A stretch of 64,000 nt of DNA from Octopus sinensis (taxonomy: Eukaryota). Below are positions 1,127-50,362 of this stretch, one piece after another. The position numbers and the translations under genes were made by a program. The notes beneath the pieces were generated by a model that did no database searches, was not told the origin of the DNA, and was given only the letters and a program-made list of their open reading frames with translations. Each line of letters opens with the position of its first letter. The stretch's first letter is position 1. The stretch is from contig NC_042998.1 in the NCBI RefSeq assembly GCF_006345805.1, forward strand, positions 91,636,001-91,700,000. Direction: 5' to 3'.

Positions 1127-2255
1127 GAATGGAAAAGAAATCAGGCCAACCTCACTTACCAAAATTATTCAAGATGGTGAAGTGTGTACTTTAAAAACCA
1201 ATAAATTCACAAAGAATGATGTTGGTGTTTACAAGTGTGTTGTCACAAACACTGTTGGTTCTGTTGAATGTGAAGCTACTATTACACTTGATGAAGAAAA
1301 GCCTAAGGAACGCAAACCTGAATTTGAAGAAATCTTTACATCAGCCAATATCAAATTGAACGAACCATTGGAACTGAAATGTAAAGTAACAGGTGAACCA
1401 AAGCCTTCCATTAAGTGGTTTAAAGACAACAAGGAAATCAGACAAACCTCTCTCACCAAAATTATTCAAGATGGCTCAGTATATACTCTGAAAACTAGCA
1501 AATTCACTAAGAATGATGTCGGTGTTTACAAGTGTGTTGCTACAAATTCCACTGGCTCAGTTGAATGCGAAGCTACTATTACACTTGAGGAAGAAAAGAC
1601 ACGCAAACCTGAATTTGAAGAAATCTTTACATCAGCCACTTTCAAATTGAATGAACCATTGGAGCTGAAATGTAAGGTAACAGGTGAACCAAAGCCTACC
1701 ATTAAGTGGTTTAAAGACAACAAGGAAATCAAACAAACCTCTCTCACCAAAATTATTCAAGATGGCTCAGTATATACTCTAAAAACCAGTAAATTCACAA
1801 AGAATGATGTCGGTGTTTACAAGTGTGTTGCTACAAATTCTTCTGGTTCAGTTGAATGCGAAGCTACTATTACACTTGAGGAAGAAAAGACACGCAAACC
1901 TGAATTTGAAGAAATCTTCACATCAGCTACTATCAAATTGAATGAACCATTGGAGCTGAAATGTAAGGTAACAGGTGAACCAAAGCCTACCATTAAGTGG
2001 TTTAAAGACAACAAAGAAATTAAGCCAACATCACTTACCAAAATTACTCAAGATGGTACTATATGTATATTAAAAACAACTAAATTCACTAAGAATGAAG
2101 TCGGTGTTTACAAGTGTGTTGCTACAAATTCCACTGGTTCAGTTGAATGTGAAGCTACTATCACACTTGAGGAAGAAAAACCAAAGGAAGCCAAACCAGA
2201 ACAGAAGAAACCTGAACAGAAGAAACCTGAATTTGTAGAAGTTCTTCAACCAACT
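1127..2255 (+). CDS. Exon 2: 1129-nt fused exon with one Ig 3' half, three near-identical full Ig domains (291-nt period) and a KPEQK linker
   Basis: tttcag|G...CCAACT|gtaag; overlaps ORF 1182..2273. Confidence 0.93.
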
Positions 2256-3579: not shown

Positions 3580-3746
3580 AGACAATGTTGAAATTAAGCC
3601 AACTATTAAATATAAGATGTCACAAGAGGGAGATGTATGCACTTTGAAAATGGCTAAATTTACTAAAGCAGATGCAGGCATTTATAAATGTCTTGCAACT
3701 AATCCTGCAGGATCAACAAGTTGTGAAGCTTCAGTTACCTTATTTG
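3580..3746 (+). CDS. Exon 4: Ig 3' half (167 nt, phase 2-1)
   Basis: ttacag|A...TTTG|gtatgt; DNVEIKPT...DAGIYKCLATNPAGSTSCEASVTLF. Confidence 0.9.
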
Positions 3747-4381: not shown

Positions 4382-4780
4382 GCAGGTGCAGGCATGGCTG
4401 TGTGGTAAGAAGCTTGCTTCCAGCCATGTAGTGCTATGTTCAATCTCACTGCATGGCAACTTGGGCAAGTGTCTTCTGCTATAATCTTGGGCCAACCAAA
4501 GCCTTGTGAGTCAATTTAGTTGATAGAAACTTAAAGAAGCCCACTGTGTGTGCATCTTTGTGTCTGTGTTTGTCCCTGCACCACATGACAGCTGATGGTG
4601 GTGTGTTTATGTCACCATAACTTAGCAGTTTAGCAAAAAGAGAGACTAATAAAATAAGTACCACACTCAGAAAATAAAAATAAGTACTAGATTTGATTTC
4701 TTCGACTAAACATTCTTCAGGGTAGTGCTCCAGCATGGCTCTAGTCTAATGACTGAAACAAGCTAAAGATGAGAGATAAA
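4382..4780 (+). mobile_element. SINE-like family A (GGCTGTGTGGTAAG head ... GACTGAAAC tail)
   Basis: Homologous to copies at 5163, 16845, 18255 and 39975; internal (GT)n-like tract. Confidence 0.75.
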
Positions 4781-5133: not shown

Positions 5134-5580
5134 TAGGAGTGGCTATGTGCTAAGTAGCTAGGCGTAGGAGTGGCTGTGTGGTAAGTAGCTTGCTTACGAA
5201 CCACACTGTTCCGGGTTCAGTCCCACTGTGTGGTACCTTGGGCAAGGGACTTCTATTATAGCCTCAGGCCGACCAAAGCCTAGTGAGTGGATTTGGTAGA
5301 CAAAAACTGAAAGAAGCCCATCGTATGTATATATATATATGTGTGTGTGTGTGTATGTTTGTGTGTCTGTGTTTGTCCACCCTCCAACATTGCTTGACAA
5401 CCAATGCTGGTGTGTTTATGTCCCTGTAACTTAGCATTTCAGCAAAAGAGACCAATAGAATAAGTACTAGAGTACTAGGCTTACAAAGAATAAGTCCTGG
5501 GGGCGATTTGCTCGACTAAAGGTAGTGCTTCAGCATGGCCACAGTCAATATGACTGACAAGTAAAAGAGTAAAAGAGTAA
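5134..5580 (+). mobile_element. SINE-like family A with duplicated 5' head
   Basis: GTAGGAGTGGCT(A/G)TGTG..AAGTAGCT occurs twice in tandem (about 5134 and 5164); B-box-like GGGTTCAGTCCC; internal (TA)(TG) tract. Confidence 0.8.
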
Positions 5581-12099: not shown

Positions 12100-12920
12100 G
12101 GATGGCAAAGAAGTAAGAAACACAGCTAAGAGTGTTATAACTCAAGATGGGCAACAGTGCACTCTGAAAATACCAAAGATTTCAAAGACAGATATTGGTC
12201 TTTATAAATGTGTTGCAACAAACCCTGCTGGATCTGCTGAATGTGAAGCTCCTGTTTCACTTGAAGAAGAAAAGCCAGCAGAAAAGAAACCAGAGGAAAA
12301 GAAACCAGAAGAAAAGAAGCCAGAGCAAAAGAAACCTGTATTTGAAGAGATCTTCAGTTCAACAATCATCAAGGTGAATGACATTTTGGAATTGAAATGT
12401 AAGGTAACTGGTGAACCGAAACCTACCATCAAGTGGTTTAAAGATAACAAAGAAATTAAGCCAACATCTCTTACCAAACTTACTCAAGATGGCCAAGTGT
12501 GCATATTAAAAACCAGTAAATGCACAAAGAATGATGTTGGTGTTTACAAATGTGTTGCCACAAACCCTGCTGGATCTGCTGAGTGTGAAGCTACTATAAC
12601 ACTTGAGGAAGAAAAACCAAAAGAAAAGAAACCAGAGCAAAAGAAACCAGAATTTGAAGAGATCTTCCCATCAGTATCCCTTAAACCTAATGACGTTTTG
12701 GAACTGAAATGCAAGGTAACTGGTGAACCAAAGCCTACTATTAAGTGGTTTAAAGACAACAAAGAAATTAAACCAACATCACTTACCAAACTCACACAAG
12801 ATGGCCCTGTATGTGTACTAAAAACCAGCAAATTCTCCAAGAATGAAGTTGGTGTTTACAAATGTCTTGCCACAAATCCTGCTGGTTCTGCAGAATGTGA
12901 AGCCACTGTTTCACTTGAAG
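12100..12920 (+). CDS. Exon 16: 821-nt fused exon (Ig 3' half plus two full Ig domains with KPE(E/Q)K linkers)
   Basis: aaccag|G...GAAG|gtcag; includes ORF 12374..12928. Confidence 0.92.
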
Positions 12921-16813: not shown

Positions 16814-16844
16814 GTAAATAAATTTAGTTCTATGCAAAGGGGAA

Positions 16845-16995
16845 ACAGGAGTGGCTGTGTGGTAAGTAGCTTGCTTACCAACCACATGGTTCCGGGTTCA
16901 CTGTGTGGCATCTTGGGCAAGTGTCTTCTACTATAGCCTCGGGCCAACCAAAGCCTTGTGAGTGGATTTGGAAGACGGAAACTGAAAGAAGCCCG

Positions 16996-17051
<56 letters not shown>

Positions 17052-17250
17052 TTTGTGTGTCTGTGTTTTGTCCCCCCAACATTGCTTGACAACCGATGCT
17101 GTTGTGTTTATGTCCTCGTAACTTAACGGTTCAGCAAATGAGATCGATAGAATAAGTACTAGGCTTACAAAAGAATAAGTCCTGGGGTCGATTTGCTCAA
17201 CTAAAGGCAGTGCTCCAGCATAGCTGCAGTCAAATGACTGAAACAAATAA
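16845..17250 (+). mobile_element. SINE-like family A, well preserved, with internal (TA)n
   Basis: Near-identical to 5163-5580. Confidence 0.8.
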
Positions 17251-18254: not shown

Positions 18255-18600
18255 ACCAGCATGGCTGTGTGGTTTAGTAGCTCACCTTGCATTGCAAGTA
18301 TGTGAGCAAGGATCTTCTACTATAGTCCTGGGACAACCAGTGCTTTGTGAGTGAATTTGGTAGATGAAAACTTTGTGTATCTTTGTGCCTATGTTTGTCC
18401 CTGCCTTCTTGCTTAGCAACTGATGTTGGTTTGTTTCTGTTCCTGTAACTTAGAAGTTCAGCTAAGGAAATTAATAGAATAAGTACCAGACTTTAAAAAA
18501 TGCTAAGTACTACAGTTGATTTGATTGACTAAAACCACTCAAGGCAGTGCCCCAGCATGGCTATAGTCTAATGACTGAAACAAGCAAAACATAACAAGTT
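18255..18600 (+). mobile_element. SINE-like family A, diverged
   Basis: Head catggctgtgtgg, body tcttctactatag, tail gtgcccagcatggc...atgactgaaac. Confidence 0.7.
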
Positions 18601-21352: not shown

Positions 21353-21638
21353 ATGGTACCACAGAATTCCGTTGCAAGATTGCTGGTGAACCTAAACCAA
21401 CAATTGAGTGGTCTAAGGGAAAATGGATGAAACTTCAAGATGGTGGACGTATTAAAATCTATTATGATGAAAAAACAGGAGAAGAGGTTATGAAGATGGA
21501 AACAACCAAAACTGGAGATGCAGGTACTTACACTGTAACGTTGACCAATGAGCATGGAACAGAATCTGCACCAGCAACTCTTATTGTAACAGACAAGGAA
21601 GAGGAGGAAACAGATTGGAAAGCCGGCTTAAAACACAG
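21353..21638 (+). CDS. Exon 25: KGKW-type Ig domain (MyBP-C C1 / titin I80-like)
   Basis: ttaag|AT...CACAG|gtaaa; GTTEFRCKIAGEPKPTIEWSKGKWMKLQDGGRIKI...NEHGTESAPATLIVTDKEEEETDWKAGLKHR. Confidence 0.9.
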
Positions 21639-21760
21639 GTAAAATTATTGAAGCTGTAAATATTTATTTTTTGCATGTTTTTTTTATAATAGGAAATATA
21701 GCTGCTCTGTACTTGTACATTTACACACATGCCCTCACACACATACATACATGCATATAT

Positions 21761-23453
<1,693 letters not shown>

Positions 23454-23526
23454 AGAGTTTTCAAAAAAATAAAAGACGAAGACAGGTAGTGTACAAAACA
23501 AACAGATGTACAGGAATAGAAAAAGT

Positions 23527-23562
23527 CTTTTACGTTTCGAGTCTACGCTCTTCTACAGAAAG
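23527..23562 (-). ncRNA. Degenerate minimal hammerhead-like motif in a repeat next to a (TA)n tract
   Basis: Minus strand: CTTT-CTGTAGA-A-GAGC-GTAG-ACTC-GAAAC-GT-A-AAAG; core deviates from CUGANGA at A6 and stem II has one mismatch. Confidence 0.4.
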
Positions 23563-24296: not shown

Positions 24297-24462
24297 GGAG
24301 CAAGAAGAACGAGAACTTGAAGAAGACGCTGGCTTTGATATTAACCTTCGTAAGGTTGAACTGGAAGAACAAGAGGTGACTCTAACTGATACCACCAAAC
24401 GTACTATGGAAATTGAAGCAGATGAAGTAACATATGATCTAAAGAAGAGAGATATGCCTGAA
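24297..24462 (+). CDS. Exon 26: acidic non-Ig linker (166 nt, phase 2-0)
   Basis: atatag|G...CCTGAA|gtaag; EQEERELEEDAGFDINLRKVELEEQEVTLTDTTKRTMEIEADEVTYDLKKRDMPE; not in the ORF track but bridges the phases exactly. Confidence 0.85.
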
Positions 24463-24917
24463 GTAAGTAGAATTTTTATATATCTTTGTGAGTGAAGATT
24501 GTATTTTATTTATTGAAGGATATCTATTTACATTTTTTGTTAGATGTGCTAACTCTAAAAATCAGTATATAAATGAAGCATGTTTAATACTACATACATA
24601 GTTAAATTCTATAATATCAAAGTGATATTTTTTACTAGAGAAATGCAAAGTATAAAATATCATTAAAGTTAAGCCCATTAAAATATTATCTTTGATATTT
24701 AATATTTTAAACTGACCATGTCGTTATTGAAGAGTAAATTAGCTCTTGAAATTAATACTGAAATGAATATTTAGTTTGTGGATGTTATTTTTTGTTTTAT
24801 AATAACAAGATGTTAATATTATAATTAAGGTTTTTATATTTCAATTTTAAGATTTAAATTTTAAATACATATTTTTACGTTTTTATTTTCATTATGTTTA
24901 TGTATTTTTGTTTTTAG

Positions 24918-25112
24918 TTGGATGAATTCAAAGACAAAACATATGATCTTCAAAAACGTGAAGACATTGAGTTAGCTAAAGTAGATAAGAAACCTGGAAA
25001 GGATGAAAAAGAGAAAGATAAAAAGAAACCTGAAGACAAATATGCAAAGAAACCCAAAGAAAAAGATACTGCTACCCTAGAAGATGGTGGTTTCAAGACT
25101 GTCAAGAAAACG
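24918..25112 (+). CDS. Exon 27: K/D/E-rich PEVK-like linker (195 nt, phase 0-0)
   Basis: ttttag|TTG...AAAACG|gtgag; LDEFKDKTYDLQKREDIELAKVDKKPGKDEKEKDKKKPEDKYAKKPKEK... Confidence 0.87.
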
Positions 25113-25329
25113 GTGAGAAAAATGATAAATTTGTTAGGAAGAGTAATTGAAAGTTTTTTAGTGGACACATCAAAAATATTAGCAATATTTGAAACTTTCT
25201 TACCATTATCCTCTAAAACATAAAAGAACTTCACTAAATTCATACACATTTCACTTATTCCCTCTGGGAGATTTTCCATGAATTATGAATCATCTGAGCA
25301 TGATCGTTGCTAGAGCAACAAACTAGCTT

Positions 25330-30310: not shown

Positions 30311-30667
30311 AAAACTATTTCTGGCTAAAAATATCATACATGCATGGAATTACAATTTTAAGCACCCAACGAAGTATTATTGTAAGCTGAAGTTGTTACT
30401 AATATAAAAAGAAATGGAATGGTGAAACTATTTTTTCATTTTCTGAGAAAGCAACGTTTTGGACTTATGATACTTTTGTATAATAGCAACGATATAATTT
30501 CATATTCAATACATTCAATTTCAAGCAATTACATTGTCCTTAAATTTAGTTACTATATATGTTATTAAATCAATTTTTATTTTTATTTTGTAATACTATA
30601 ACAGTGATGAAAATGTTTATCTGCATTATTTAATTATTATCTACTGCAAAGCTATTTCTTAAATTAA

Positions 30668-30890
30668 TGGGCCTCACAGTAGTGAGGTGGCTGAGTTCCT
30701 TTCAAGCTTTGGGTCTCATGGAGGCAAAGTGGCTGAGTTCCTTTTGAATGTTGGGCCTTACAGAAGTGGGGTGACTGAGTTCCTTTTGAGTGGGCCTCAT
30801 GAAGGGGAGGTGGCTGAGTTCCTTTTGAGTGTTGGGCCTCATGGAGGTAAAGTGGCCCAGGTCCTTTTGAGTGTTGGGCCTCACGGAGAC
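30668..30890 (+). repeat. Minisatellite, unit of about 39-42 bp, about 5 copies
   Basis: Recurring GTGGCTGAGTTCCTTTTGAGTGTTGGGCCTCATGGAGG; translates as the VAEFLLSVGPHGGK repeats of ORF 30687..31043. Confidence 0.8.
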
Positions 30891-31185
30891 AATGACCAAG
30901 ACCTTTGGCATTATGTCATGCTTGAGAAGACCCATCAAGCCGAGCAAAATCCCAGTCAGGGCAGATACCGGTGTCATGCAAATGGCACCCATGCTTGTGG
31001 CATGTTAAAACATCCATTACACTCTCAGAGTAGTTGGCAGTAGGAAGGGCATCCAACCATATAAAACCATGCTAAATCAGACTGGATCCTGGCACAGCCT
31101 TCCATTGTGCCAGCCCAGTCAAACTGTCCAACTCATGCCAGCCTGGACAACAGACGTTAAATGACATTGATGATGATGATGATGA
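30890..31185 (-). mobile_element. Interspersed repeat family C, reverse orientation
   Basis: gttggcagtaggaagggcatcc...gacgttaaatga...(GAT)n. Confidence 0.7.
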
Positions 31186-38973: not shown

Positions 38974-39240
38974 AAGAACCAGTTCAGTTCCTGAAACCAC
39001 TTAAAGATATCAAAATTATGGAGAAAGAGAAAGCTGTCATGGAATGTGAAATTAACAAACCAAATAAAAAGGCAGTTTGGAAGTTTGAAAAAGAAATCTT
39101 TAGTGGTAGTGAACGAGTTGAACTTGTTGTGGATGGTTGCGTTCACAGAATGATCATTGAACCCTCTGAACTTGATGATGAAGGGGAATATACTATTGTG
39201 GTAGATGGTGTAAAGAGCTCTGCAATTCTAACGGTTGATG
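38974..39240 (+). CDS. Exon 35: distal Ig 8 (267 nt)
   Basis: ttgcag|AA...GATG|gtagg; EPVQFLKPLKDIKIMEKEKAVMECEI... Confidence 0.9.
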
Positions 39241-39974
39241 GTAGGTTATTCATATTTATATTATTTTTGTTACCTAACTTGTTACATATCTAAACAAATT
39301 ATTGATTTTCTTTTTATTGTGTATTGGTTATTTCGCTTTATATTACATATATTTGGCTTACAGCATAGTTTTGATAATTGTTAGTAGTAAGATTGCAAAG
39401 AAAATTCTTTCATTGAAAATATTTTGTCGTGTATTGTTTCATAACAGATAAACAGTATGGAAACTATTTCTTTCTCATCATTGATATTAATATTATTGTT
39501 ATGAATCAACCAGTCACTTCACTACTATCATCTTTACTACCTTCATCATCACCATCATCACCAGTACCAGTGCCACTATTTTAACAATTCATGCTACTAT
39601 GGTTAGATTGGCTTTCTTAACACTAGTTGATTAGTTCAGAAAATGAAGGTGTATAGATATATTTATATACTGTAAGCTGAATTTGTTATTGAAAAATTAA
39701 TGTTGAGGTTATAAATGCTTTCAAATGGGATTTTGAAATTATATGTCACTTTTACATTTAAAAAAATGTAATGATTTTTATTAAACACACTTTAAAATAG
39801 TGTTATAGTTTGTGAATAACATTTGTAATATCAGCAATTTAGTTAGTTTAATTTTCTTTAAATATTTTAGAAATTAAACTATGTGTAGTTTAATTTAGAT
39901 TTACTTTGGTTGTGTAACTAGTATCAAGAATCTTACTGAACAAATGCAAAAATCCAATATCTTTGATATCAGGT

Positions 39975-40370
39975 GCAGCAGGTATGGCTGTGTGATAGGA
40001 AGCTTGCTTTGCAGTCTTCAAGTTCAGTCTCACTGCACAACACCTTGGGCATTTGCCTTCTGCCTTAGCCCCAGGCCAACCAATGCTGTGGAAATGACTT
40101 TTATAGACAGAAACTGTATGGAAGCCCATCATATATATGTATACATACACATGAATGTGTGTATATCAGTGTTTTCTGTCAGCGTTTGACCTTCTCACCT
40201 CTTGACAACCAGTGTTGATTTGCTTACATCCCTGTAAGTTAGTGGTTCAGAAAAGGAGACTGACAGAATAAATACCTGACTTCAAAAAACAAGTACTGAG
40301 GTCAATTTGGTTTTAGTGCCCCATTATGGTCGCAGTTTACTGACTGAAACCAGTAACAGATAATAAAAGA
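39975..40370 (+). mobile_element. SINE-like family A, diverged, just upstream of the candidate cassette exon
   Basis: Head gtatggctgtgtg; tail cttgacaacc...tgactgaaac. Confidence 0.65.
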
Positions 40371-40567
40371 TGTCATTCACTCACACATTCTTGCAATTGA
40401 AGATTATAATTTTATTTGATTTTCTTTAAATTATTTGAACTCTAATCATAATTTATGTTGATCATTGTTTCATTAGTTTATTTGTTACCACTTTTATTTT
40501 CTAAGCACAGCAACATACAAAGAAATACAAATCACTTTGCCACAAATATCAATTGTTATTTTTTCAG

Positions 40568-41602
40568 AAGATGGTCAAGATGTTGGCCATAATAGGCACC
40601 AAAATATTGACTATCCAGTTAAAGATGATATTCAACAAAAGAAAGGCCATAGGAAAGATAATGTCAATGAGTTTGATCTAAATCATAGTGGCTATCACGT
40701 TGATCAACAAATAAGCAAATCCACTGACTTGGAGTCTAATCTTGAGGCTCAACAAAAAATTGGTAGAGAAGTTGACCAAAAGATCAGATTCAAAGTCAAG
40801 AAAGACTCTGATCAAATGGCCAGTTCTGAGGCTGAACTTACAAATGCTACAGATAGAAAAACTAGTCTCATAACTGACCAGAACTTTGATCAGAATGTTG
40901 ACAAAAAGGTCATCCCTGAAATTGATCAAGTTACTAATTTGGTTGATCAAAAGATGTCTAAAGGTTATAATAAAAAAGACCATCTTGAAATCAACCAAAC
41001 AGGTCTGTCAGAACTCTCAAAAGATACAAGTAGAAATGTTGATGCTCCTTCTGATTTTGTTAGAAGATCTGAAGAGGATGAAATGCTGAATATTTATTCA
41101 GATGAGATTGATCATAAACTTAAATCAAATAAAACTAGGATTTGTCATAAAGCTAATGATGTTACTGATTCTGACTTTTATCAAATAGAAGGTAGCAAAG
41201 CTAGTTATGACTTGAGTTCTGAAGTAAGACCTAAAGGATATTTTGAATCTGGTAATAAAGCTATTTTAAGAGATGGTGCAAATCTAGATGAGAAATTGGA
41301 TCAGAAAATACGAAAAGCAAATGAGAGAGACTATAGTTTAAAAGATACTAATAAACTTGATCAAGGGGATGACTGGCCAGTTGACAATAAAGCTAATCAA
41401 GCAGTTGAGCAACATATTAGCCATGGCATTAAAATTGATCAATTTAATGATCATAACATTGGCCAAAGTGCAGAATATGGCCAAAGTGCAGAATATGGCC
41501 AGAGTGCAGAATATGGCCAAAGTGCAGAATATGGCCAAAGAGCAGGATATGGCCAAAACAGTAATCAAGATGCCAAACATGGCTTACAATGGATTGACAA
41601 AA
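40568..41602 (+). CDS. Candidate alternative exon: 1035-nt phase 1-1 cassette encoding 345 aa of low-complexity D/Q/K/N/S-rich sequence with (GQSAEY)n
   Basis: Stop-free frame (ORF 40537..41664) in AT-rich intron DNA. The acceptor ttttttcag|AA is in the phase required by exon 35, and the candidate donor AAAA|gtatta keeps frame into exon 43224. The donor is weak, so a terminal-exon reading (stop at 41662-41664) is also possible. Confidence 0.6.
41461..41550 (+). repeat. 18-bp tandem repeat x5 (GGCCAAAGTGCAGAATAT) inside the candidate exon
   Basis: Encodes GQSAEY x4 plus GQRAGY; unit length is a multiple of 3. Confidence 0.92.
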
Positions 41603-43223
41603 GTATTATTTTCTGTTATTTTTACATTAACTTCCACTGTTTTGTATTTGATTTTCAGAAATAATTAGTATTTAAGTATCTTTATTAATAAAATAATATG
41701 TAGATACTAACCTTCATGCATTTTGATAACATTTTAACAATGTATTTGAATATCACATTGCATTGTTTCATAATTCCATCTCTTGAAATATTTTTCTTCA
41801 TATTTGTACAGTTAATTAGTTACATGTGAATTAGGAAGAGAAAGATAAACTACTTCAATTATTGTCTAAACGTATACAGCAAAACCTTTTGGATTATTTT
41901 CAACAACTGTTAATACACTATTTAACTTTACCCATGTCATCATTTCCTAAAAGTATCTTGTCAATCACCATAAATAATATAATTTGAACCTATTGCATAT
42001 ATTAAATATATTACTGGTATATATATATATATATACACAGTTGTTCCATGTTTGGCATGTTTTAAGGCAAGATTTTTTTTATCATCACTAAAAACAGAAG
42101 CAGTTTCCTTTGTTTTTCAACTGAATTTTCTTTCAGTTTTCTTCCAAATCCTCAAAACACAAGGAAGCATTAAATTCAAATAATTATTGTATTAAGATAA
42201 AAATATATGAATAAACTCTGATATAATAGATTATATAATAGGCTATAATAGATTAACATGATCAGAATAGTTTGGTGTAATGTCTGTAAAGAAGAGCAGT
42301 TATAGCACCAGCAATTCTTTTTCTTTAATTTCTGATTTGTTGTTTAATTCATTTTTGTTAGTCCTGTCAATTGAAATTTATTCTTGTTATCTGATTTTGG
42401 TTAATTTCTAGAAGCAGTATTCATGTGTATCATGTAGCTGTCCTCATTATAAATCATGGAATTTATGAGATAATGAAAATAAGGAAATGTATATGCTTGT
42501 GTATTATTAATACAACTGATCCTATGAATATCCTAAGACTGAAATATACAACCATCAATCTTTTAGTAATATTCTGGTAGATGTGCATGTTGGTATATAT
42601 TGAGAGATTCACATTCTTCAATTATATAAACTTTCTCAATAATTATTTTGACACTAAATAAAAGGAATGGAATAACCAATTGAATGTAAGGAATTATGCT
42701 TACATTGATCTATAGAATTAGTCTTTCTGTCTGTTGCTCTCTTATCCTGTCTTTCCTCCTTTCTCACTCTTTTCTCTCATTCCTTCTTCCCTCTACTCTT
42801 TTCCCTCTTTAACTTTGTCTTGCTGTCTCCCTCATACACACACACACACGCACTTATTATTCTCTCTAATTTTGTCCCTCTCTCTTGCTTTAGGAACCAC
42901 ATTAATTCTTAAAACTTAATATTATGCATGTTTCTAGTAATTTATATTATTAATTACTTTGATTATGCTGCAGAATTATTTTGTTGTCATGCTGTCATTT
43001 ATTTTATCACCAAATTCATTATCTTTATGATTCTAACAATTAATTCAACTAGACATTTTTTTTCTAGTCTGGAGATAAATATTTGAATAAGTTTAATAAA
43101 AATATTAATTTATATTTTTATTTTTAAGCATTAAAATTATAGATTCCTACTATATAGACTAAGTATTAATTACAACTTTCCCCATTAAACTTTCTAAATA
43201 TAAAATGCAATTTTATTTTTCAG

Positions 43224-43490
43224 AAGAGCCATTAGAATTTTTGAGTCCTCTAAAAGACCAAGAGGTAATGGAAAATGATGACATTCTCTTGGTATGCGAG
43301 GTATCCAAACCAAATGTGACTGGTTGTTGGATGAAAGCAGGAAAAGTTATTGAAAAGGACTCGCATTTCAATTTCACAGTTGAAGAAAAGAAACATACAC
43401 TAATTGTGCAAAAAGCACAGCTTAATGATGAAGCAAATTATGAATTCAAAATAATGAATAAATCCACAAAAGCTTTTGTAAAAGTGAAAG
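43224..43490 (+). CDS. Exon 36: distal Ig 9 (267 nt)
   Basis: tttcag|AA...AAAG|gttgg; EPLEFLSPLKDQEVMENDDILLVCEV... Confidence 0.9.
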
Positions 43491-44352
43491 GTTGGTCACT
43501 GTAACTTATTAATTAGATTTGATCTTTCTACAACACCTTTGATCATTATGTTTCTGTTGAAATACTCTGCCTTTATTACAATTAATTTTGAAAATACTGG
43601 AGAATTTAGTAAAATAACTTTATCATTACTAAGCTAGTATTTGGATCATAAACTATAAAATCTTACCAGAAGTTTATAATTTAATTTTGAAACAAGAAGT
43701 TCATGTCATAGAACCAAAGGCAGGTTGATAGCAAAATGGTTAGATCATAGCCAAGTAATTAGAATGCCTCTTAGTTGAAGCATTTCAAAATACAGATTGA
43801 GACTTCTTTTTGATTTAGTATTGTTAAACTTGTCAGATTCACTCTTACAATTTTCTATGTTGTTTCTAGTGCAAAAATTCTAATAGCGTATCTGTTGTTT
43901 TATTAGAGGATGATTAAGAAGCTATAAATAATTACATATAGAAATTGGACATAAATATACTATCATAATTAATTTTTCTATTTTTATGATAAGTAATATT
44001 TTATTTCAATCTACTGGTTTATTATTGTTTAATTAGTCTCCACAAACTGCTATTTAGTACCTTTCCCCTTTTCTGGTACTCCTAATTTTTACATTAACTT
44101 TGTTTGAAAATTGAATTATAGAATACATATTTTGTTGGAGAAGAATTGGAAATATGTATTGCACATATAAAACATATGGTACATATTTTATGTGTATTGT
44201 ACATATAAAGTATGTATCATGCACATATAAAACCATATAAAAAAATAACTGCAATAAACTTAGAGATGTATTTTCTCATAATTTAATTTTACAAAATAAA
44301 CAAAGTAAACAAGATCTGATAAGTCTGTAACAAATTCTTCATTGTTTTACAG

Positions 44353-44622
44353 AGGGTGAAGTCAAATTCATCAAAGAACTTGAAGATCAAACCGTTGAAA
44401 AGATTCCTGGTGAAGCCACTTTCACATGTGAGATAAATCGTCCTAATTTGAAAGCTCAATGGTTCTGTAAGGGCAAACCTATTACACCAAATAAAAAATA
44501 TGAAATTGTTGTTGAAGGCTGTGTGCACAAATTAATCATAAAGGGTGTGAAACCTGAAGATGTTGCTGACTATAGCATGACTGTTAAAGACAAAACTACA
44601 AAAGCTGCTCTATCTGTTGAAG
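44353..44622 (+). CDS. Exon 37: distal Ig 10 (270 nt)
   Basis: ttacag|AG...GAAG|gtaaa; GEVKFIKELEDQTVEKIPGEATFTCEI... Confidence 0.9.
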
Positions 44623-44731
44623 GTAAAATTGATATCAAATTTAATAAAATCATATTTCATGTAAAATACACTTAAATGATATTTTCCACTATGTTGATGG
44701 AAAAATAACAATGTATTTCTTCTGCTTCTAG

Positions 44732-45016
44732 TTGCTCCTGAGTACACTTTGGCTGATAAATACAAGGAAGTTATTTGTATTAAAGCTGGTGAAAGCACAT
44801 CTGTCTCAGTACCATTCTCTGGCTTTCCTATTCCGAAAGCCACTTGGCTTCATAATGATAGTGAACTTGATAAAACAAGGATGTTGGTTGACTCTTCTGC
44901 TGATGTTACCAAGATAAATTTCAAAAATGTTAAAAGGTCAGATTCTGGTGAATACAAACTCTGCTTAGAGAATTCTGCTGGAAAAGTTGATGTCACTATT
45001 ACACTAAAGGTTCTAG
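44732..45016 (+). CDS. Exon 38: Ig immediately preceding the first FN3 (285 nt)
   Basis: ttctag|TT...CTAG|gtaac; APEYTLADKYKEVICIKAGESTSVSVPFSGFPIPKATW... Confidence 0.9.
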
Positions 45017-45779
45017 GTAACTATCTAACATGTTATTTACGATATTGTTTGTGACAAAGTTTGGCAACAAGACATTTATATATATTTACTTATATATAAA
45101 AAAATGTCTTTTAATGCTTAAAATTTAATCTTCAAATACAGATTTAACTGCAATCAATGCTTTAACTTTGAAATTCTTGATTTATACAGTGATATTTGAA
45201 TTTCTAAATTGTGTGTTCATACTTTTAAGTTTCATCATATTTTGTTTGAAAAGCACTTTTATTGCCTTTAACATTAAGAAGTATATTCATTCAATATGTT
45301 GATAAAATTGTGGCAGGAAAGTTAATATTTTGAAGTGATTTAATGGCTTATATGCATTGAAAACAATTGCTATTATAATACATTACTATAGACAACACAA
45401 AATACAAATACGCTTTATTTTTTTTTGCTTTTACTTAACTAATGACTTTGTAATGCTATTGGGCAATTTATTGCATGTCTTATTGCTTATTTTTATTTAT
45501 TTACCGCAATTTTATTACACCTGAGAACGTTTTTGATCACATGTATTATTTTATAACAAAATGAATTAAGAAATATTTACTTTCATCAAAATGTATCAAT
45601 ATTCAAGTCAATGATTAAAAAAAAATAATTCATTAAAAAAAGCTTTGCAACATTAACAAATTATCTTGCATGGATTTGGTTAATTATTTAACTTATATTA
45701 TATTAGCTATTTTACATAGAAGGTTATATGACTGAATTTAGAATCTAGATATTAGTTAGATAATTGGTCTATATTTTAG

Positions 45780-46076
45780 ACAAGCCAGGTCCAGTCCGTA
45801 ACCTTCAAGTCAAAGATGTGTTGGCTGAATACATGACACTAACATGGCAAGTTCCTGAAGATAATGGAGGTAGTTCAATCACTGCTTATATTGTTGAAAA
45901 AAGAGAAGATAATCGACGAATGTGGCAAGAAGCAGGTGAATCAGTAATATTGGAACACGTTGTAGAAAATCTTCGAGAAGGAAGCAAATATCTCTTTCAA
46001 GTTGCTGCTAAAAATAAGTATGGTATTGGAGATTTCGTCGAAATTCCTGAGCCTGTTCTAGCAAGGCATCCATTTG
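45780..46076 (+). CDS. Exon 39: FN3 #1 (297 nt)
   Basis: ttttag|AC...TTTG|gtatg; KPGPVRNLQV...WQVPEDNGGSSITAY. Confidence 0.9.
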
Positions 46077-46629
46077 GTATGTAGATCAAATATATAGATA
46101 AAATTTTATCATTATTATCTCAAATATATTTTCTAATTTGCTTTGATATGCTCAGCTTATTTAACAACCTGCTTCACTAATTACACTAAAACTTATGTGT
46201 AGATAAATGTGTGTATGAATGTGTTTATGCAAATTTTTGTGTGATTTGCAAGGAGCATTCGATTCAATTTATAAAGAAAAAACATTTACTTTGATCTACT
46301 TGATTTAAATTACTGAAATATATTGTAGCTTAAGTCATTAGCAAATTAGAATATGTTAAATATCAAAACACAATTAAATATAGCTCTATGGTTCAGAAGT
46401 TTACACCTATGCAGTTTTCAATTTTATGCCACTGTGTGACACTTTGGGCTAGTGTCTTCTATGACAGTCCCAAGTTAATCAATACCTTATGAATAAAATT
46501 CGATAAATGGAGACTCTGCAGAAGACTGTTGTGTGTGAATGTATATATGTGTGTGCTTGCATGCAGATACGTATATATATTTATATATATAGATATATAT
46601 ATTTATATATATATATAGATATATATATT

Positions 46630-46670
<41 letters not shown>

Positions 46671-46840
46671 TGCATGGGTCAAAGTACTAGTGTTGATATA
46701 ATCCACAAATATTCATTGGACATACTGTGCCAGCATGGACATTGTCCAATGACTAATAATAGTAAAAGAAAAGGAAGAAAATTATTGCTATTTAAAAATA
46801 AAATACTTGTAATGAATTTTGTTGTGTCTTGGGTGAGTCA

Positions 46841-47133
46841 TTACACCAATAATAATAACACATGCATAGGTTCAATTCCACTTCTTTATTGTTAGTCAAC
46901 TAGGTAAATATTTAAGCAGCTAATTGTTTGTTAGTCAATTGTTTGTGGCTGTTCATGACCTTTTCAGTGACTTTCCCTCTTGTTCTAAGATTGCAATGGC
47001 AGAACTTTGATTAACAAACAGCCAAAAGATTGTTTTACCTGCACATTAAACAAATGATCATTGAAATATTTAACTAGTTGACTAACAGTAAAGAAGTGGA
47101 ACTGGACCTGTGCATGTGTTATTATTGGTGTAA
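46841..47133. repeat. Fold-back inverted repeat with arms of about 70 bp (MITE-like)
   Basis: 46841-46913 matches the reverse complement of 47064-47133; an inner segment tgtttgttagtcaa also pairs with ttgattaacaaaca. Confidence 0.8.
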
Positions 47134-47789
47134 TTACACTCTCAACAAAATTTGTTTCAACACAAATTCACAAGAAGAATCTTAAAAACCAATTACAAAA
47201 ACAAAGTTTGTAATGAAAATGTAGATATTATTTAAACTTGCAAATGATAATTTTTTCTTGCTATTCTCTGCTATTTTATGTCTTTAATATAATAAAATGC
47301 TTTTCATTTAACACTACAACAGGGAAATTTTAATTGTTTCTAATTTAAAAATTTTATTCAAAAACTAGCTTCACAAGTGTTATTACCTGAGCTAGTTTTA
47401 GAATCTGCACCACAGTACAATGGCAGAATTGACAGATGCATTTAAAAGCTCTAACCTGAAGCTGAGTACGGGAGAAGCTTTGCATGATTATTTTCAAGTG
47501 ATCAGTAATATACTTAATACTGCAAAGTAATGAAATACATCATTAATTATAACACTACTCATATTATTTTTAGCACTAAGCTATACTTATCTGTGGTACT
47601 CATTTTGATTAAATATGAACCAACTGTAGTGAGGATTAAATGTTTGTCAATCTCTCATAACTATCACAGTACAGTGTCTGTCGTGAAATAAGAATTGTTG
47701 ATCTTTAGAGCAGTATTTTAACAGCATTCTGACTCAGCCAGCTGCAACTCTAACAATATTACTGCAAAAATAGATAATCACAAGCAGTT

Positions 47790-48230
47790 ATAATAATAAT
47801 AATAATAATAATATTAGTAGTAGTTATAGTACTAGTAGTAGTAAGGAAATATCAACAACATTAATAATAGTAATAATAATGATAATAATAATAATAATAA
47901 TATTAATAATAATAGTAACTGTTTATTAAAAATAATGATGATACAATAATAATAATGATGATGATTATGAATATTTCATTTGCTACAGGGACATTGGATG
48001 GGGACATTAAAAGGACACTACAATTTGTGTGGGGATCTACATAAAAGATGATGGGAAAAAGGGAGAGAAGGGGAATGGAGATCAAAGTATACATGTTATA
48101 TAAAAAATATAAATAATAATATTGATTATAATGATAATTATATATAATAATAATCATGTAAATAATAATAGTAATAATAATGATAATTATAATAATAATG
48201 ATAATAATAATAATAATAATAATAATGAGT
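47790..48230. repeat. (AAT)n-rich trinucleotide tracts
   Basis: Visible at about 47790-47960 and 48110-48230. Confidence 0.9.
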
Positions 48231-48355
48231 ATTTTTAAAGTTATATCTCGGTTCTTATATTTTGAATAAGTTACAGTCTAGATGACCAAGTAATTTTGTA
48301 TACTTAAAAACTTTTCAATGATAGATGTCATAACATGTTTTCTAAAATTCTTCAG

Positions 48356-48658
48356 ATCGTCCTGATGCACCTGATGCACCAACTGTTACAGATGTATTCA
48401 AAACATCTGCAAAAGTAAGCTGGACCCCTCCAAAGGAGGATGGTGGATCACCTATTATTGGATATCATTTGGAGAAAATGTCAGATCTTAGCCCAAGGTG
48501 GATTCGTATTAACAAAGAACCAACTTCAAATCTTGATATGCTTTTGAACGATCTGGTAGAAGATTCTTCATATCAATTTAGGGTAGTTGCTGTCAATAAG
48601 GCTGGTGAAAGTGAACCCAGCAAACCATCCAGTCCTGTTAAGATGCAAGATCCTTGGC
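48356..48658 (+). CDS. Exon 40: FN3 #2 (303 nt)
   Basis: cttcag|AT...TGGC|gtgag; RPDAPDAPTVTDVFKTSAKVSWTPPKEDGGSPIIGY. Confidence 0.9.
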
Positions 48659-49083
48659 GTGAGTAAAAAAGAAATAAAGTGCATATTTTTCTCAAATATG
48701 ATATAAACCAATTTTTTTTTACTAGCCTGGCAAAGGTTACTCCTGGTTCAATGGTACCCCCTCCTTTTAAAATGATCTCACTTAAATCATTCCTCAAATT
48801 TTCATGGTAATAATTGTTCTAAAAATCAGCCTAATAATGAACAAAATTATTTTGCTAAACTCTTTTTTGTTTTCAAATTTAATTGAAGTAAAAGCAGCAT
48901 ATTGCAACAGAAATATGGTAGCCATTAGGAAATTAATGTCCAAGTTTGATATTTCTCAAGTAAAAGTAGAATAGAAATAGTATTTGTAGTATATTATTTG
49001 CTTTTTTAAAAAATATTTTTTGAATGAAACTAGATGGATTTTCTAGTATTTTAAAATAAAGTTTTCCATTTATTATATCATAA

Positions 49084-49460
49084 AAGGCGAGTTGGTAGAA
49101 ATGTTAGCACACGGGGTGAAATGCTCAGCAGTATTTCATCTGCCACTACGTTCTGAGTTCAAATTCCACCGAGGTTGATTTTGCCTTTCATCCTTTCGGG
49201 GTCGATTAAATAAGTACCAGTTACACACTGGAGTCGATGTAATCAACTTAATCCATTTGTCTGTCCTCTCTGTGTTTAGCCCCTTGTGGGTAGTAAAGAA
49301 ATAGGTATTTCATTTGTCTTTATGTTCTGAGGTCGATTTTGCCTTTCATCTTTTCGGGGTTGATAAATTAAGTACCAGTCGTGTACTGGGGTCAGTCTAA
49401 TCAACTGGCCCCCTCCCAGAAAAGTTTGGGCCTTGTGCCTAGAGTAGAAAAGATTATATC
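49084..49460 (+). mobile_element. SINE-like family B copy followed by a partial second copy
   Basis: Same sequence as 2898-3130; the ttctgag...gattttgcctttcatc block is repeated at about 49325. Confidence 0.75.
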
Positions 49461-50056
49461 GTGAAAGGGATGCAAAAGGGAACACAGTATTTCATTATGA
49501 ATATTAATATCATAGTATCTTAAATTTAAAATATTTATATTACATATAATATTTTCCAGTCAATATTTGTGATAGAAAAATTAAGTTGGCAAGTTTTAAA
49601 TATCAGTTGATGATTATCGGAATATAAGGTAATTAAAAGAGAGAAAATATGACCTTGGATGCTGGCAATAGCAATTTCAAAACTAAAGTATCCAGTTTGA
49701 ATATCTAAAACAATTGATGCTATTAAGATAGTGACGTTAATTAAATAGAAGAAAGTAAAAATTAGAAAGATATTTAGTTTCAAAAATGTATAACAAATTA
49801 AGTTAGATATACATTGAATTGTTAGAACTTTAAGTTTATTATGGTTCATGGTTTTCAATTTCAATGTACAGATTCAACTTCAAATCCAACTATTCTACCC
49901 ATTATCCCACAAAAACTGGTAAAATAAACAGCAATAATATAATTGAGAATGTATTCAATAGACCTAACCAGCATCAAAATTAACCATCTCCATTTCACAA
50001 AAGACATCTTTATTGATAGTAAGATATATTTCAAATCTGTACATTCTTCCTTTCAG

Positions 50057-50362
50057 ATAAACCTTCTAGACCTGATACACCTCTGGTTGTGGAAACAGAT
50101 GATACATCTGCACTGTTGAAATACTCACCACCTACTGATGATGGTGGTAGTCCTATATTTAATTATGTCATTGAATATCGTCTTGCTGGCTCAGTGAAAT
50201 GGACCCAAGCTAATATTGATAAAAAGGTTCCAGAACTCACCTATAGAGTACAGAAGTTGAAAAAAGGTTCAGAATATGAATTCAGAATTGCTGCTGAAAA
50301 TCGGGCTGGTGTTAGTGAATTTTCAGCACCAACAGAACTGATCAAAATTGAAAAACCAATTG
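50057..50362 (+). CDS. Exon 41: FN3 #3 (306 nt)
   Basis: tttcag|AT...ATTG|gtaat; KPSRPDTPLVV...YEFRIAAENRAG. Confidence 0.9.

What the first reader, a model, noticed from the sequence alone, without database searches (positions are those of the whole stretch)
40568..41602. Hidden 1035-nt frame-preserving cassette exon inserting a 345-aa disordered segment into the distal Ig tandem
Seen in sequence: over 1 kb without a stop codon in AT-rich intron DNA, with a good acceptor in exactly the phase left by exon 35. The candidate donor (AAAA|gtatta) makes the length 1035 = 345 codons, so inclusion or skipping keeps frame. The peptide has no Ig motifs and is D/Q/K/N/S-rich. It has recurring xDQ(K/N/Q) motifs (VDQQI, VDQKI, TDQNFDQN, VDQKM, LDQKI) and ends in GQSAEY repeats. 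Established knowledge: vertebrate titin (PEVK, N2B unique sequence, novex exons) and IGFN1 tune length and elasticity with large alternatively spliced unstructured exons. Inference: this is an isoform-specific spring or scaffold with a non-PEVK composition. Alternatively it is a terminal exon (stop at 41662-41664, AATAAA at about 41687) giving a truncated isoform without FN3 domains.
Basis: partly seen in the sequence, partly recalled or inferred. Interest (0 to 1): 0.72.

Follow-up and report, generated by a model that had tools for sequence, protein, structure and literature searches.

The report
Probable extra exon in titin-like gene
A 1-kb open reading frame inside an intron of a giant titin-like muscle gene looks like a real protein-coding exon with no known relatives, but how it ends (spliced onward or terminating the protein) cannot be settled without RNA data.

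Summary
Window 40477-41661 (+) is the longest stop-free frame in the 64 kb: 395 codons, about 1e-14 by composition. Its codon-position signature matches the Ig/FN3 exons of the host gene. It begins at one of the best acceptors in the window (40568), in the phase-1 register left by the upstream Ig exon (38974-39240). The peptide is acidic and polar (D/K/Q/S/N), carries ten hydrophobic-D-Q motifs and a 5.4-copy GQSAEY array, and has no predicted globular fold. It has no homolog in about 1.8 billion representative proteins, Pfam, PDB or metagenome contigs, and it is unique in the window.

The proposed donor (AAA|GTATTA, 41602/41603) scores below all 37 real donors of this gene. It lacks both -1G and +5G, which no real donor here does, and about half of all GTs in the window score as well. 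Against that, the coding signal ends exactly there (41577-41605). A good in-phase donor exists at 41251/41252. A stop follows at 41662, and the AATAAA at 41687 is at chance frequency.

My estimate: in-frame internal exon about 0.5, alternative terminal exon about 0.25, untranslated relic or other about 0.25. No transcript or ortholog data could be reached. Alternative splicing and a spring function are untested.

The parts
38974..39240 (+). Upstream I-set Ig exon of the titin-like host gene. Phase 1 at both ends; donor ATG|GTAGGT.
   Evidence: The sister-species protein P0001 carrying this exon has Pfam PF07679. The exon shows only 2 synonymous differences from the sister-species contigs L001/L002, against about 9 % divergence in the intron.
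39971..40366 (+). Interspersed SINE-like repeat in the intron upstream of the ORF. It is not part of the exon.
   Evidence: blastn finds copies at 5171-5467, 16838-17195, 4388-4543 and 18424-18597. 22-nt direct repeats at 39847 and 40415 flank it.
40511..40567 (+). Possible 57-nt 5' extension through an alternative in-phase acceptor (cacag|CA at 40511).
   Evidence: Acceptor PWM is 7.0, near the median of real acceptors, though sites this good occur 1.4 per kb. The codon-model 5' change point falls at 40507-40519.
40548..40567 (+). Polypyrimidine tract plus AG of the main acceptor (attgttattttttcag|).
   Evidence: PWM 13.0. This is within the top 0.4 % of 3433 AGs in the window, and at the top of the 2.4-13.8 range of the 37 real acceptors.
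40568..41602 (+). Coding-type segment of 345 codons in phase 1-1: an acidic, polar, non-domain peptide.
   Evidence: Codon log-likelihood is +0.24 bits per codon in frame, against -0.41 and -1.62 in the other frames; introns give -0.38 +/- 0.33 and real exons 0.26-0.88. The off-frame stop pattern (0 / 2.9 / 22 per 100 codons) parallels that of real exons (0 / 4.9 / 13). It ranks first among 72 non-annotated open frames. No homolog was found.
41252..41259 (+). Best internal donor candidate, CTG|GTAATAAA, in phase 1. It would give a 684-nt, 228-codon in-frame exon (40568-41251).
   Evidence: PWM 7.1 (median of real donors about 8.2) and 6 of 9 consensus matches. It has the same type as the real donor AGG|GTAATA.
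41460..41557 (+). 18-nt tandem array encoding (GQSAEY)x4 followed by GQRAGY.
   Evidence: TRF reports period 18, 5.4 copies, 95 % matches. The copies are listed.
41603..41610 (+).
   Evidence: It is weak: PWM -0.3, 4 of 9 consensus matches, and neither -1G nor +5G. It does sit at the 3' coding change point, 41577-41605.
41603..41664 (+). T-rich, intron-like read-through tail (SIIFCYFYINFHCFVFDFQK) ending in a TAA stop at 41662-41664. It also contains an acceptor-like site, ttttcag|AAA, at 41659.
   Evidence: The codon score falls monotonically after about 41605. A-T skew turns negative. The site at 41659 has acceptor PWM 8.9, a score reached 0.78 times per kb.
41687..41692 (+). AATAAA hexamer 23 nt after the stop.
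   Evidence: Present, but AATAAA occurs 106 times in the window, or 1.66 per kb.
43224..43490 (+). Downstream I-set Ig exon, phase 1-1. Further Ig exons follow, and the first FN3 exon is at 45780.
   Evidence: The spliced 576-aa product matches titin-family proteins at up to E = 2e-217.

Best explanation
The stretch is a genuine translated exon of the titin-like gene. It is lineage-restricted, with no detectable relatives.

The phase-1 donor at 39240 is spliced to the very strong acceptor at 40568. The exon is then joined onward to the Ig exon at 43224, which keeps the frame. It inserts 228-345 residues of acidic, polar, non-globular and partly helical linker between two Ig domains, three Ig domains upstream of the first FN3 domain.

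Shown here: the frame is maintained, its codon signature matches the host gene's exons, the acceptor is strong and in phase, and the coding signal has sharp limits.

Inferred, not shown:
- that the exon is included in mRNA;
- that it is internal and not terminal;
- which donor is used: the weak one at 41602|41603, where the coding signal ends, or the good one at 41251|41252;
- that inclusion is regulated;
- that the segment acts as an extensible or docking spacer.
For: - The open frame is 395 codons, the longest in the window, with P about 1e-14. No shuffle exceeded 128 codons.
- In-frame codon log-likelihood is +0.24, against -0.41 and -1.62 in the other frames and -0.38 +/- 0.33 for introns. 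Codon-position base composition and the off-frame stop pattern match the 34 curated exons. It ranks first among 72 unannotated open frames.
- The acceptor at 40568 scores 13.0, in the top 0.4 % of AGs, in the same phase as the flanking exons.
- The coding signal stops at 41577-41605. The same change-point method places the donor within about 10 nt for 28 of 31 real exons. A phase-1 GT lies at 41603.
- The 20-codon T-rich tail before the first stop is what random intron sequence gives, where the expected distance is about 13 codons.
- The segment is not a repeat or a transposable element. It is unique in the window, has no flanking terminal repeats, and has no Pfam, PDB or protein-database homolog.
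- Outside the 98-nt array it is not a simple amplification of a stop-free unit.
Against: - The donor at the coding end is worse than every one of the 37 real donors of this gene, and about half of all GTs in the window score as well.
- No transcript, junction or proteomic evidence was accessible.
- No ortholog of the segment was found, so purifying selection could not be tested. The sister-species contigs I reached cover only the upstream exon.
- The in-frame codon score (0.24) lies just below the range of real exons (0.26-0.88), although those exons trained the model and encode folded domains.
- A stop follows 60 nt after the coding end, which also fits a terminal exon.
Confidence: 0.5

Rival explanations
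1. Alternative 3'-terminal exon. Transcripts splice into 40568, read through to the TAA at 41662, and are cleaved and polyadenylated shortly after. The product is a truncated isoform that keeps the Ig/linker (I-band-like) part and lacks all FN3-containing repeats. This would be analogous to vertebrate titin Novex-3 or to the early-stop Sallimus/Kettin isoform. A composite version is possible, in which the good donor at 41251|41252 is used in long isoforms and bypassed in the short one.
For: - There is no credible donor at the end of the coding signal. None of the 37 real donors lacks both -1G and +5G, and the candidate lacks both.
- An in-frame stop lies 60 nt downstream, and an AATAAA follows 23 nt after it.
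- The position, just before the switch to Ig-FN3 architecture, is a natural truncation point.
- There is precedent. Novex-3 exon 48 introduces a stop and gives a titin of about 700 kDa (PMC5852582). [quoted passage not shown]
Against: - AATAAA or ATTAAA occur 3.3 times per kb here, so the hexamer is not evidence.
- The last 20 codons before the stop have intron composition and encode a hydrophobic tail unlike the rest of the peptide. This suggests the selected coding region ends at about 41602, not at the stop.
- A phase-1 GT sits exactly at that boundary.
Confidence: 0.25
2. An untranslated or decaying ORF. It could be a former exon that is no longer spliced in, or a young ORF grown from cryptic simple sequence. 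It would still be open only because too little time has passed.
For: - It has no homolog anywhere.
- It shows weak but significant internal self-similarity and recurring short motifs, including the palindromic TGATCA nine times and a young 18-nt array.
- The donor is very weak.
- The codon score is at the bottom edge of the range for real exons.
Against: - 395 open codons in about 30 % GC DNA is far beyond chance. Apart from the 98-nt array, no DNA-level repeats explain it.
- The codon-phase signature matches the host exons.
- One of the best acceptors in 64 kb sits exactly at the start of the coding signal and in the right phase.
Confidence: 0.17
3. An exon of a separate nested gene on the same strand, or the ORF of an unrecognised mobile element or virus-derived insertion.
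For: It is an orphan sequence lying in a long intron (3983 nt) beside a SINE-like repeat.
Against: - The coding signal starts at a splice acceptor, not at an ATG. The first in-frame ATG lies well inside the segment.
- The phase matches the host gene.
- There is no transposase, RT, integrase or any other Pfam domain; the only hit is AAA_lid_10 at E = 0.024, below its cutoff.
- There are no terminal direct or inverted repeats around it.
- It is single-copy in the window.
- Nothing matched in the metagenome contigs or in 1.84 billion representative proteins.
Confidence: 0.05

Closest known systems
Unique-sequence insertions of vertebrate titin (N2B-us, N2A-us, Novex-1/2 exons)
   Same: A non-domain segment encoded by its own exon. 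It is inserted between Ig-domain exons of a titin-family gene in a frame-preserving phase-1 context, and has a hydrophilic, non-globular composition.
   Different: No sequence similarity to any of them. Inclusion, regulation and binding partners are unknown. The host is an invertebrate titin-like gene, and the position is just before the Ig-FN3 region, not in the proximal I-band.
Titin PEVK / poly-E spring segment
   Same: Proposed role as an extensible, unfolded spacer. The same gene has E/K/P-rich linker exons further upstream (for example 12100-12920 and 24297-25120).
   Different: P+E+V+K is only 22.7 %, with P at 1.5 %. There are no 26-28-residue PEVK repeats. The segment is D/Q/N/S-rich instead, and AF2 predicts helices.
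Titin Novex-3 exon 48 and the early-stop Sallimus (Kettin) isoform
   Same: A large alternative exon with unique sequence that carries a stop and could yield a short isoform lacking the thick-filament-binding FN3 part (PMC5852582; PMC9886281).
   Different: Use as a terminal exon is unproven here. The exon has in-phase donor candidates, and the coding signal ends 60 nt before the stop.

Membership tests
Titin-family non-domain ('unique sequence') insertion exon | Lies inside a titin-family gene, between Ig-domain exons, on the coding strand | tested here: met
   The flanking exons 38974-39240 and 43224-43490 are I-set Ig. The spliced downstream product matches titin, twitchin and IGFN1 proteins at up to E = 2e-217.
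Titin-family non-domain ('unique sequence') insertion exon | Functional acceptor and donor that keep the reading frame with the neighbouring exons | tested here: inconclusive
   The acceptor is excellent and in phase (13.0 bits). The donor at 41602 is in phase but scores below all 37 real donors. A good in-phase donor lies at 41251|41252.
Titin-family non-domain ('unique sequence') insertion exon | Present in mature mRNA or protein | not testable with these tools
   No transcript data were available. The protein databases hold no spliced product from this region.
Titin-family non-domain ('unique sequence') insertion exon | No Ig/FN3 or other globular domain; low hydropathy | tested here: met
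   No Pfam domain reaches its cutoff and there is no PDB match. GRAVY is -1.26, and the Uversky mean hydropathy of 0.36 is below the 0.43 boundary, whereas the flanking Ig exons lie above it. AF2 gives pLDDT 50 and pTM 0.20 (single sequence, so weak evidence).
PEVK segment | Composition dominated by P, E, V and K (about 70 % in titin PEVK, stated from general knowledge), with PPAK or poly-E repeats | tested here: not met
   P+E+V+K is 22.7 % and P is 1.5 %. The only tandem repeat is GQSAEY.
Alternative 3'-terminal exon (Novex-3 / Kettin type) | In-frame stop within the exon, followed by a used poly(A) site | tested here: inconclusive
   The stop at 41662 and the AATAAA at 41687 are both present. 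The hexamer occurs at background frequency, 1.66 per kb. Use of the site cannot be tested.
Alternative 3'-terminal exon (Novex-3 / Kettin type) | No obligatory downstream 5' splice site | tested here: inconclusive
   The donor at the coding end is very weak, which fits. However, in-phase donors with normal scores exist inside the exon, at 41252, 40964 and 41003.
Transposable-element or viral ORF | Homology to transposase, RT, integrase, capsid or similar, multiple copies, and terminal repeats | tested here: not met
   There are no such Pfam hits. The only 2 hits among 1.84e9 representatives are spurious tandem-repeat proteins. The segment is single-copy in the window and has no flanking repeats. 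Genome-wide copy number could not be tested.

The most novel reading that the evidence does not exclude
A taxon-specific orphan segment with hydrophobic-D-Q motifs and a GQSAEY array has been recruited into a titin-like gene just before its thick-filament (Ig-FN3) part. It would serve either as a regulated non-PEVK spring or docking cassette, or as the C-terminal tail of an independently evolved 'Novex-3/Kettin-like' short isoform. Either case would be convergent isoform engineering of a giant muscle protein in a lineage where titin splicing has not been described.
Probability: 0.3. Interest if true: 0.55.

Novelty: new member of a known kind. Interest (0 to 1): 0.36.

Why it matters
Giant titin-family proteins set the passive stiffness and sarcomere layout of muscle largely through alternatively used non-domain exons. 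Almost all of what is known comes from vertebrates, Drosophila and C. elegans.

If this exon is expressed, it would give a concrete and testable handle on how another invertebrate lineage varies its titin-like protein. A SINE recalled from memory hints at an octopod; this was not tested. The variation would be either an added spacer with a new composition or a truncated isoform lacking the FN3 region. It would also be a clean example of an orphan coding sequence fixed inside a conserved modular gene.

If it is not expressed, it is a caution that long open frames with good acceptors can sit in introns. It is also directly useful for annotation: gene models of this locus should be checked for this exon.

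Tried and rejected
- **Homology searches on the 344-aa peptide.** The word-indexed search of 5.8e9 proteins gave nothing. Full HMMER against 1.84e9 representatives gave two hits, both tandem-repeat artefacts. Pfam gave only a sub-threshold AAA_lid_10 hit. PDB sequences and JGI metagenome contigs gave nothing. One caveat: no listed titin hit exceeded 1007 aa, so full-length titin models seem to be absent from that database, and an orthologous segment inside one would have been invisible.
- **Comparative test.** The flanking-exon query found contigs from a closely related species (L001/L002), but they cover only the upstream exon and part of the intron. The best distant locus (L003, 44 % identity) is a compact titin-like gene that already has FN3 domains upstream of the match, so it is not the orthologous junction. 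No dN/dS could be computed.
- **Sample identity.** A search for the SRA run numbers in the paper library returned nothing.
- **Transposable-element or repeat origin.** Rejected: no copies in the window, no terminal repeats and no domains.
- **'ORF kept open by amplification of a stop-free unit'.** Rejected for all but the 98-nt array. There is only weak peptide-level self-similarity, z about 3. Two blastp self-comparisons printed nothing useful.
- **Structured RNA.** Rfam found nothing at gathering threshold in the whole window.
- **Alternative donor types.** By reading the sequence, there is no GC-AG or U12-type (ATATCC / GTATCC) donor near 41577-41610. The GT at 41615 is in phase but would create a TAA at the junction.
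- **Fold search of the AF2 model.** Not run, because the model is low-confidence.

Full report
**Context.** The window carries, on the + strand, a long run of exons for a titin-family protein.
- Early on there are Ig modules joined by E/K/P-rich linkers, in large exons at 1127-2255 and 12100-12920.
- Next come charged non-domain exons near 24.3-25.1 kb, followed by a tandem of single-Ig exons.
- From 45780 onward there are Ig-FN3 repeats.
- A 576-aa product spliced from six consecutive phase-1 exons (43224-50362) matches titin, titin-like, twitchin and IGFN1 proteins, with E-values down to 2e-217 and at most 44 % identity.
- Introns are about 27-30 % GC.

The finding lies in the 3983-nt intron between two I-set Ig exons, 38974-39240 and 43224-43490. 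Both exons are phase 1 at both ends.

- The stop-to-stop frame 40477-41661 is 395 codons and is the longest open frame in any of the six frames of the window. It is longer than the largest confirmed exon.
- With the local stop-codon probability of 0.078 per codon, the chance of such a run is about 1e-14. In 2000 shuffles of the stretch the longest open run never exceeded 128 codons.
- The arithmetic of the proposed exon is right: 1035 nt, entering with AA to complete G|AA and leaving A|.
- The composition, the ten DQ motifs and the GQSAEY array are as described, and so are the stop at 41662 and the AATAAA at 41687.

**Is it coding?** I curated 37 acceptors and 37 donors of the host gene by eye from the open frames. 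From these I derived 34 exons with both ends and a codon table of 3069 codons, plus an intron trinucleotide background.
- The segment scores +0.24 bits per codon in its open frame. The other two sense frames score -0.41 and -1.62, and all antisense frames are negative.
- Intron windows give -0.38 +/- 0.33. Real exons give 0.26-0.88, but those exons trained the model and encode folded domains.
- Base composition by codon position closely tracks the exons. Position 1 is A .35 / G .35 against .37 / .34. Position 3 is T .46 / A .32 against .39 / .36.
- The off-frame stop pattern also matches: 0 / 2.9 / 22 per 100 codons, against 0 / 4.9 / 13.
- Among 72 unannotated open frames of at least 80 codons on both strands, it ranks first by codon score and is almost four times longer than any other.
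- Sliding windows show the signal switching on at about 40525-40600 and off at about 41575-41650, with positive A-T skew and raised GC in between.

Apart from the 98-nt 18-mer array, the DNA has no internal repeats that could have propagated a stop-free unit. At the peptide level there is only weak self-similarity, z about 3.

**Splice sites.**
- *Acceptor.* The acceptor at 40568 (attgttattttttcag|AAG) scores 13.0 bits. Only 0.4 % of the 3433 AGs in the window do as well, and it sits at the top of the real-acceptor range of 2.4-13.8. It is in the phase required by the upstream exon.
- *Second acceptor.* A second in-phase acceptor lies at 40511 with a score of 7.0. The 5' change point of the codon model falls there (40507-40519), so a 57-nt longer version is possible, but sites of that quality occur 1.4 per kb.
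It matches 4 of 9 positions of CAG|GTAAGT, where every real donor matches at least 5. Between 42 % and 58 % of all GTs in the window score as well. In this gene every donor without +5G has -1G (12 of 12) and every donor without -1G has +5G (11 of 11). The candidate has neither.
- *Better in-phase donors inside the frame.* They lie at 41252 (CTG|GTAATA, 7.1), 40964 (5.6), 41003 (4.5) and 41192 (4.2).

**Where does coding end?** A change-point test places the end of the coding signal within about 10 nt of the true donor for 28 of 31 real exons. For the segment it gives a plateau at 41577-41605, followed by a monotonic fall.
- The following 20 codons are T-rich and intron-like. The first stop comes at a distance typical of random sequence.
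- This pattern is what an internal exon ending at 41602 would show, but the donor there is abnormally weak.

A terminal exon explains the missing donor, but not why the last 60 nt before the stop look unselected. The AATAAA is uninformative at 1.66 per kb, or 3.3 per kb when ATTAAA is included. A composite reading is also possible, with a good donor at 41251 and read-through to the stop when that donor is not used. I could not discriminate between these without RNA data.

**What is the peptide?** It has 344 residues, GRAVY -1.26, pI 5.2, net charge -17 and 33 % charged residues. It lies on the disordered side of the charge-hydropathy boundary, while the two flanking Ig exons lie on the folded side. 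P+E+V+K is 23 %, so it is not PEVK-like. Single-sequence AlphaFold2 gives mean pLDDT 50 and pTM 0.20. Its long predicted helices are 52-101 (pLDDT up to 92), 106-130, 168-194 and 232-258, and the last 90 residues, including the GQSAEY array, are unstructured. That suggests a non-globular, partly helical spacer. The evidence is weak because there is no alignment behind the model.

**Relatives.** None were found. There is a caveat: the protein databases appear to lack full-length titin models, since no hit exceeded 1007 aa, so orthologous segments inside giant annotated proteins would be missed. Contigs from a closely related species exist. In L001/L002 the exon differs at 2 synonymous sites and the intron is about 9 % diverged with indels. 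They do not reach the segment, so conservation remains untested.

**Alternatives excluded or weakened.**
- *Transposable element or virus.* There are no domains, no flanking repeats and only a single copy in the window. The SINE-like repeat at 39971-40366 ends 200 nt upstream and is separate.
- *Independent gene.* The coding signal begins at an acceptor in the host's phase, not at an ATG.
- *Structured RNA.* No Rfam match.

**Comparison with known systems.**
- Functionally the closest are the unique-sequence exons of vertebrate titin (N2B-us, N2A-us, Novex-1/2). This part is stated from general knowledge.
- For the terminal reading, the closest are Novex-3 exon 48, which introduces a stop and yields a titin of about 700 kDa (PMC5852582), and the Sallimus isoform with an early alternative stop, historically called Kettin (PMC9886281).
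- The segment shares position and logic with these, not sequence. It fails the PEVK composition test.

**Verdict.** The most likely reading is a real, orphan, non-domain exon of the titin-like gene, with about 0.75 probability that it is translated in some isoform. I split that into about 0.5 for an in-frame internal exon and about 0.25 for an alternative terminal exon. About 0.17 goes to an unexpressed relic or young ORF, and about 0.05 to a nested gene or mobile element. 'Cassette' and 'spring' remain hypotheses.

It is a new member of a known kind of feature, and a useful annotation lead more than a surprise. Interest is 0.36.

Noticed in passing
window 39971-40366 (copies at 4388-4543, 5171-5467, 16838-17195, 18424-18597); direct repeats at 39847-39868 and 40415-40436: An interspersed SINE-like repeat family occurs in several introns. 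The copy upstream of the ORF is bracketed by 22-nt direct repeats (86 % identical) that could be a target-site duplication. It is also present in the sister-species contigs L001/L002. From memory it resembles the abundant octopus SINE, which would make the source an octopod. This was not tested.
   Followed up: partly
window 41603-41664: The T-rich tail after the coding end finishes in an acceptor-like site, ttttcag|AAA, at 41659 (PWM 8.9). Removing a 56-nt mini-intron (41603-41658) would read ...WIDK-K-stop. The shortest confirmed intron in the window is 109 nt, so this is speculative.
   Followed up: partly
window 40568-41602: The palindromic hexamer TGATCA occurs 9 times and GATCA 11 times (1.2 expected), almost always in the same codon phase (Asp-Gln). 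This could reflect a peptide motif (hydrophobic-D-Q) or an old decayed 3n repeat.
   Followed up: partly
window 1127-2255 and 12100-12920: Two unusually large exons (1129 and 821 nt) encode near-identical tandem Ig modules joined by E/K/P-rich linkers (EEEKPKEKKPEQKKPEFEE). This is a kettin-like Ig-linker arrangement, with signs of recent tandem duplication. Smaller 167-nt half-Ig exons of the same type recur at 3580, 5718, 8300, 10159 and 16176.
   Followed up: no
window 24297-24462 and about 24918-25120: Two further non-Ig, highly charged (E/K/D-rich, PEVK-like) coding stretches belong to the same gene. The donor of the second one could not be fixed by eye.
   Followed up: no
window 21600-23550: A roughly 2-kb block of TA-rich microsatellite (GC as low as 8 % at 22-23 kb) produces long spurious Y/I-rich open frames on both strands.
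   Followed up: no
window 30663-31040: A minisatellite-like tandem repeat is open on both strands (units such as GPHGGKVAEFLLSV), with raised GC (38 %). Its codon score is near zero, so it is probably non-coding repeat DNA.
   Followed up: no
(database, not window): No protein returned for the titin-like query was longer than 1007 aa, although titins are far larger. The protein collection seems to lack giant gene models, which limits any 'no homolog' statement for segments embedded in them.
   Followed up: no
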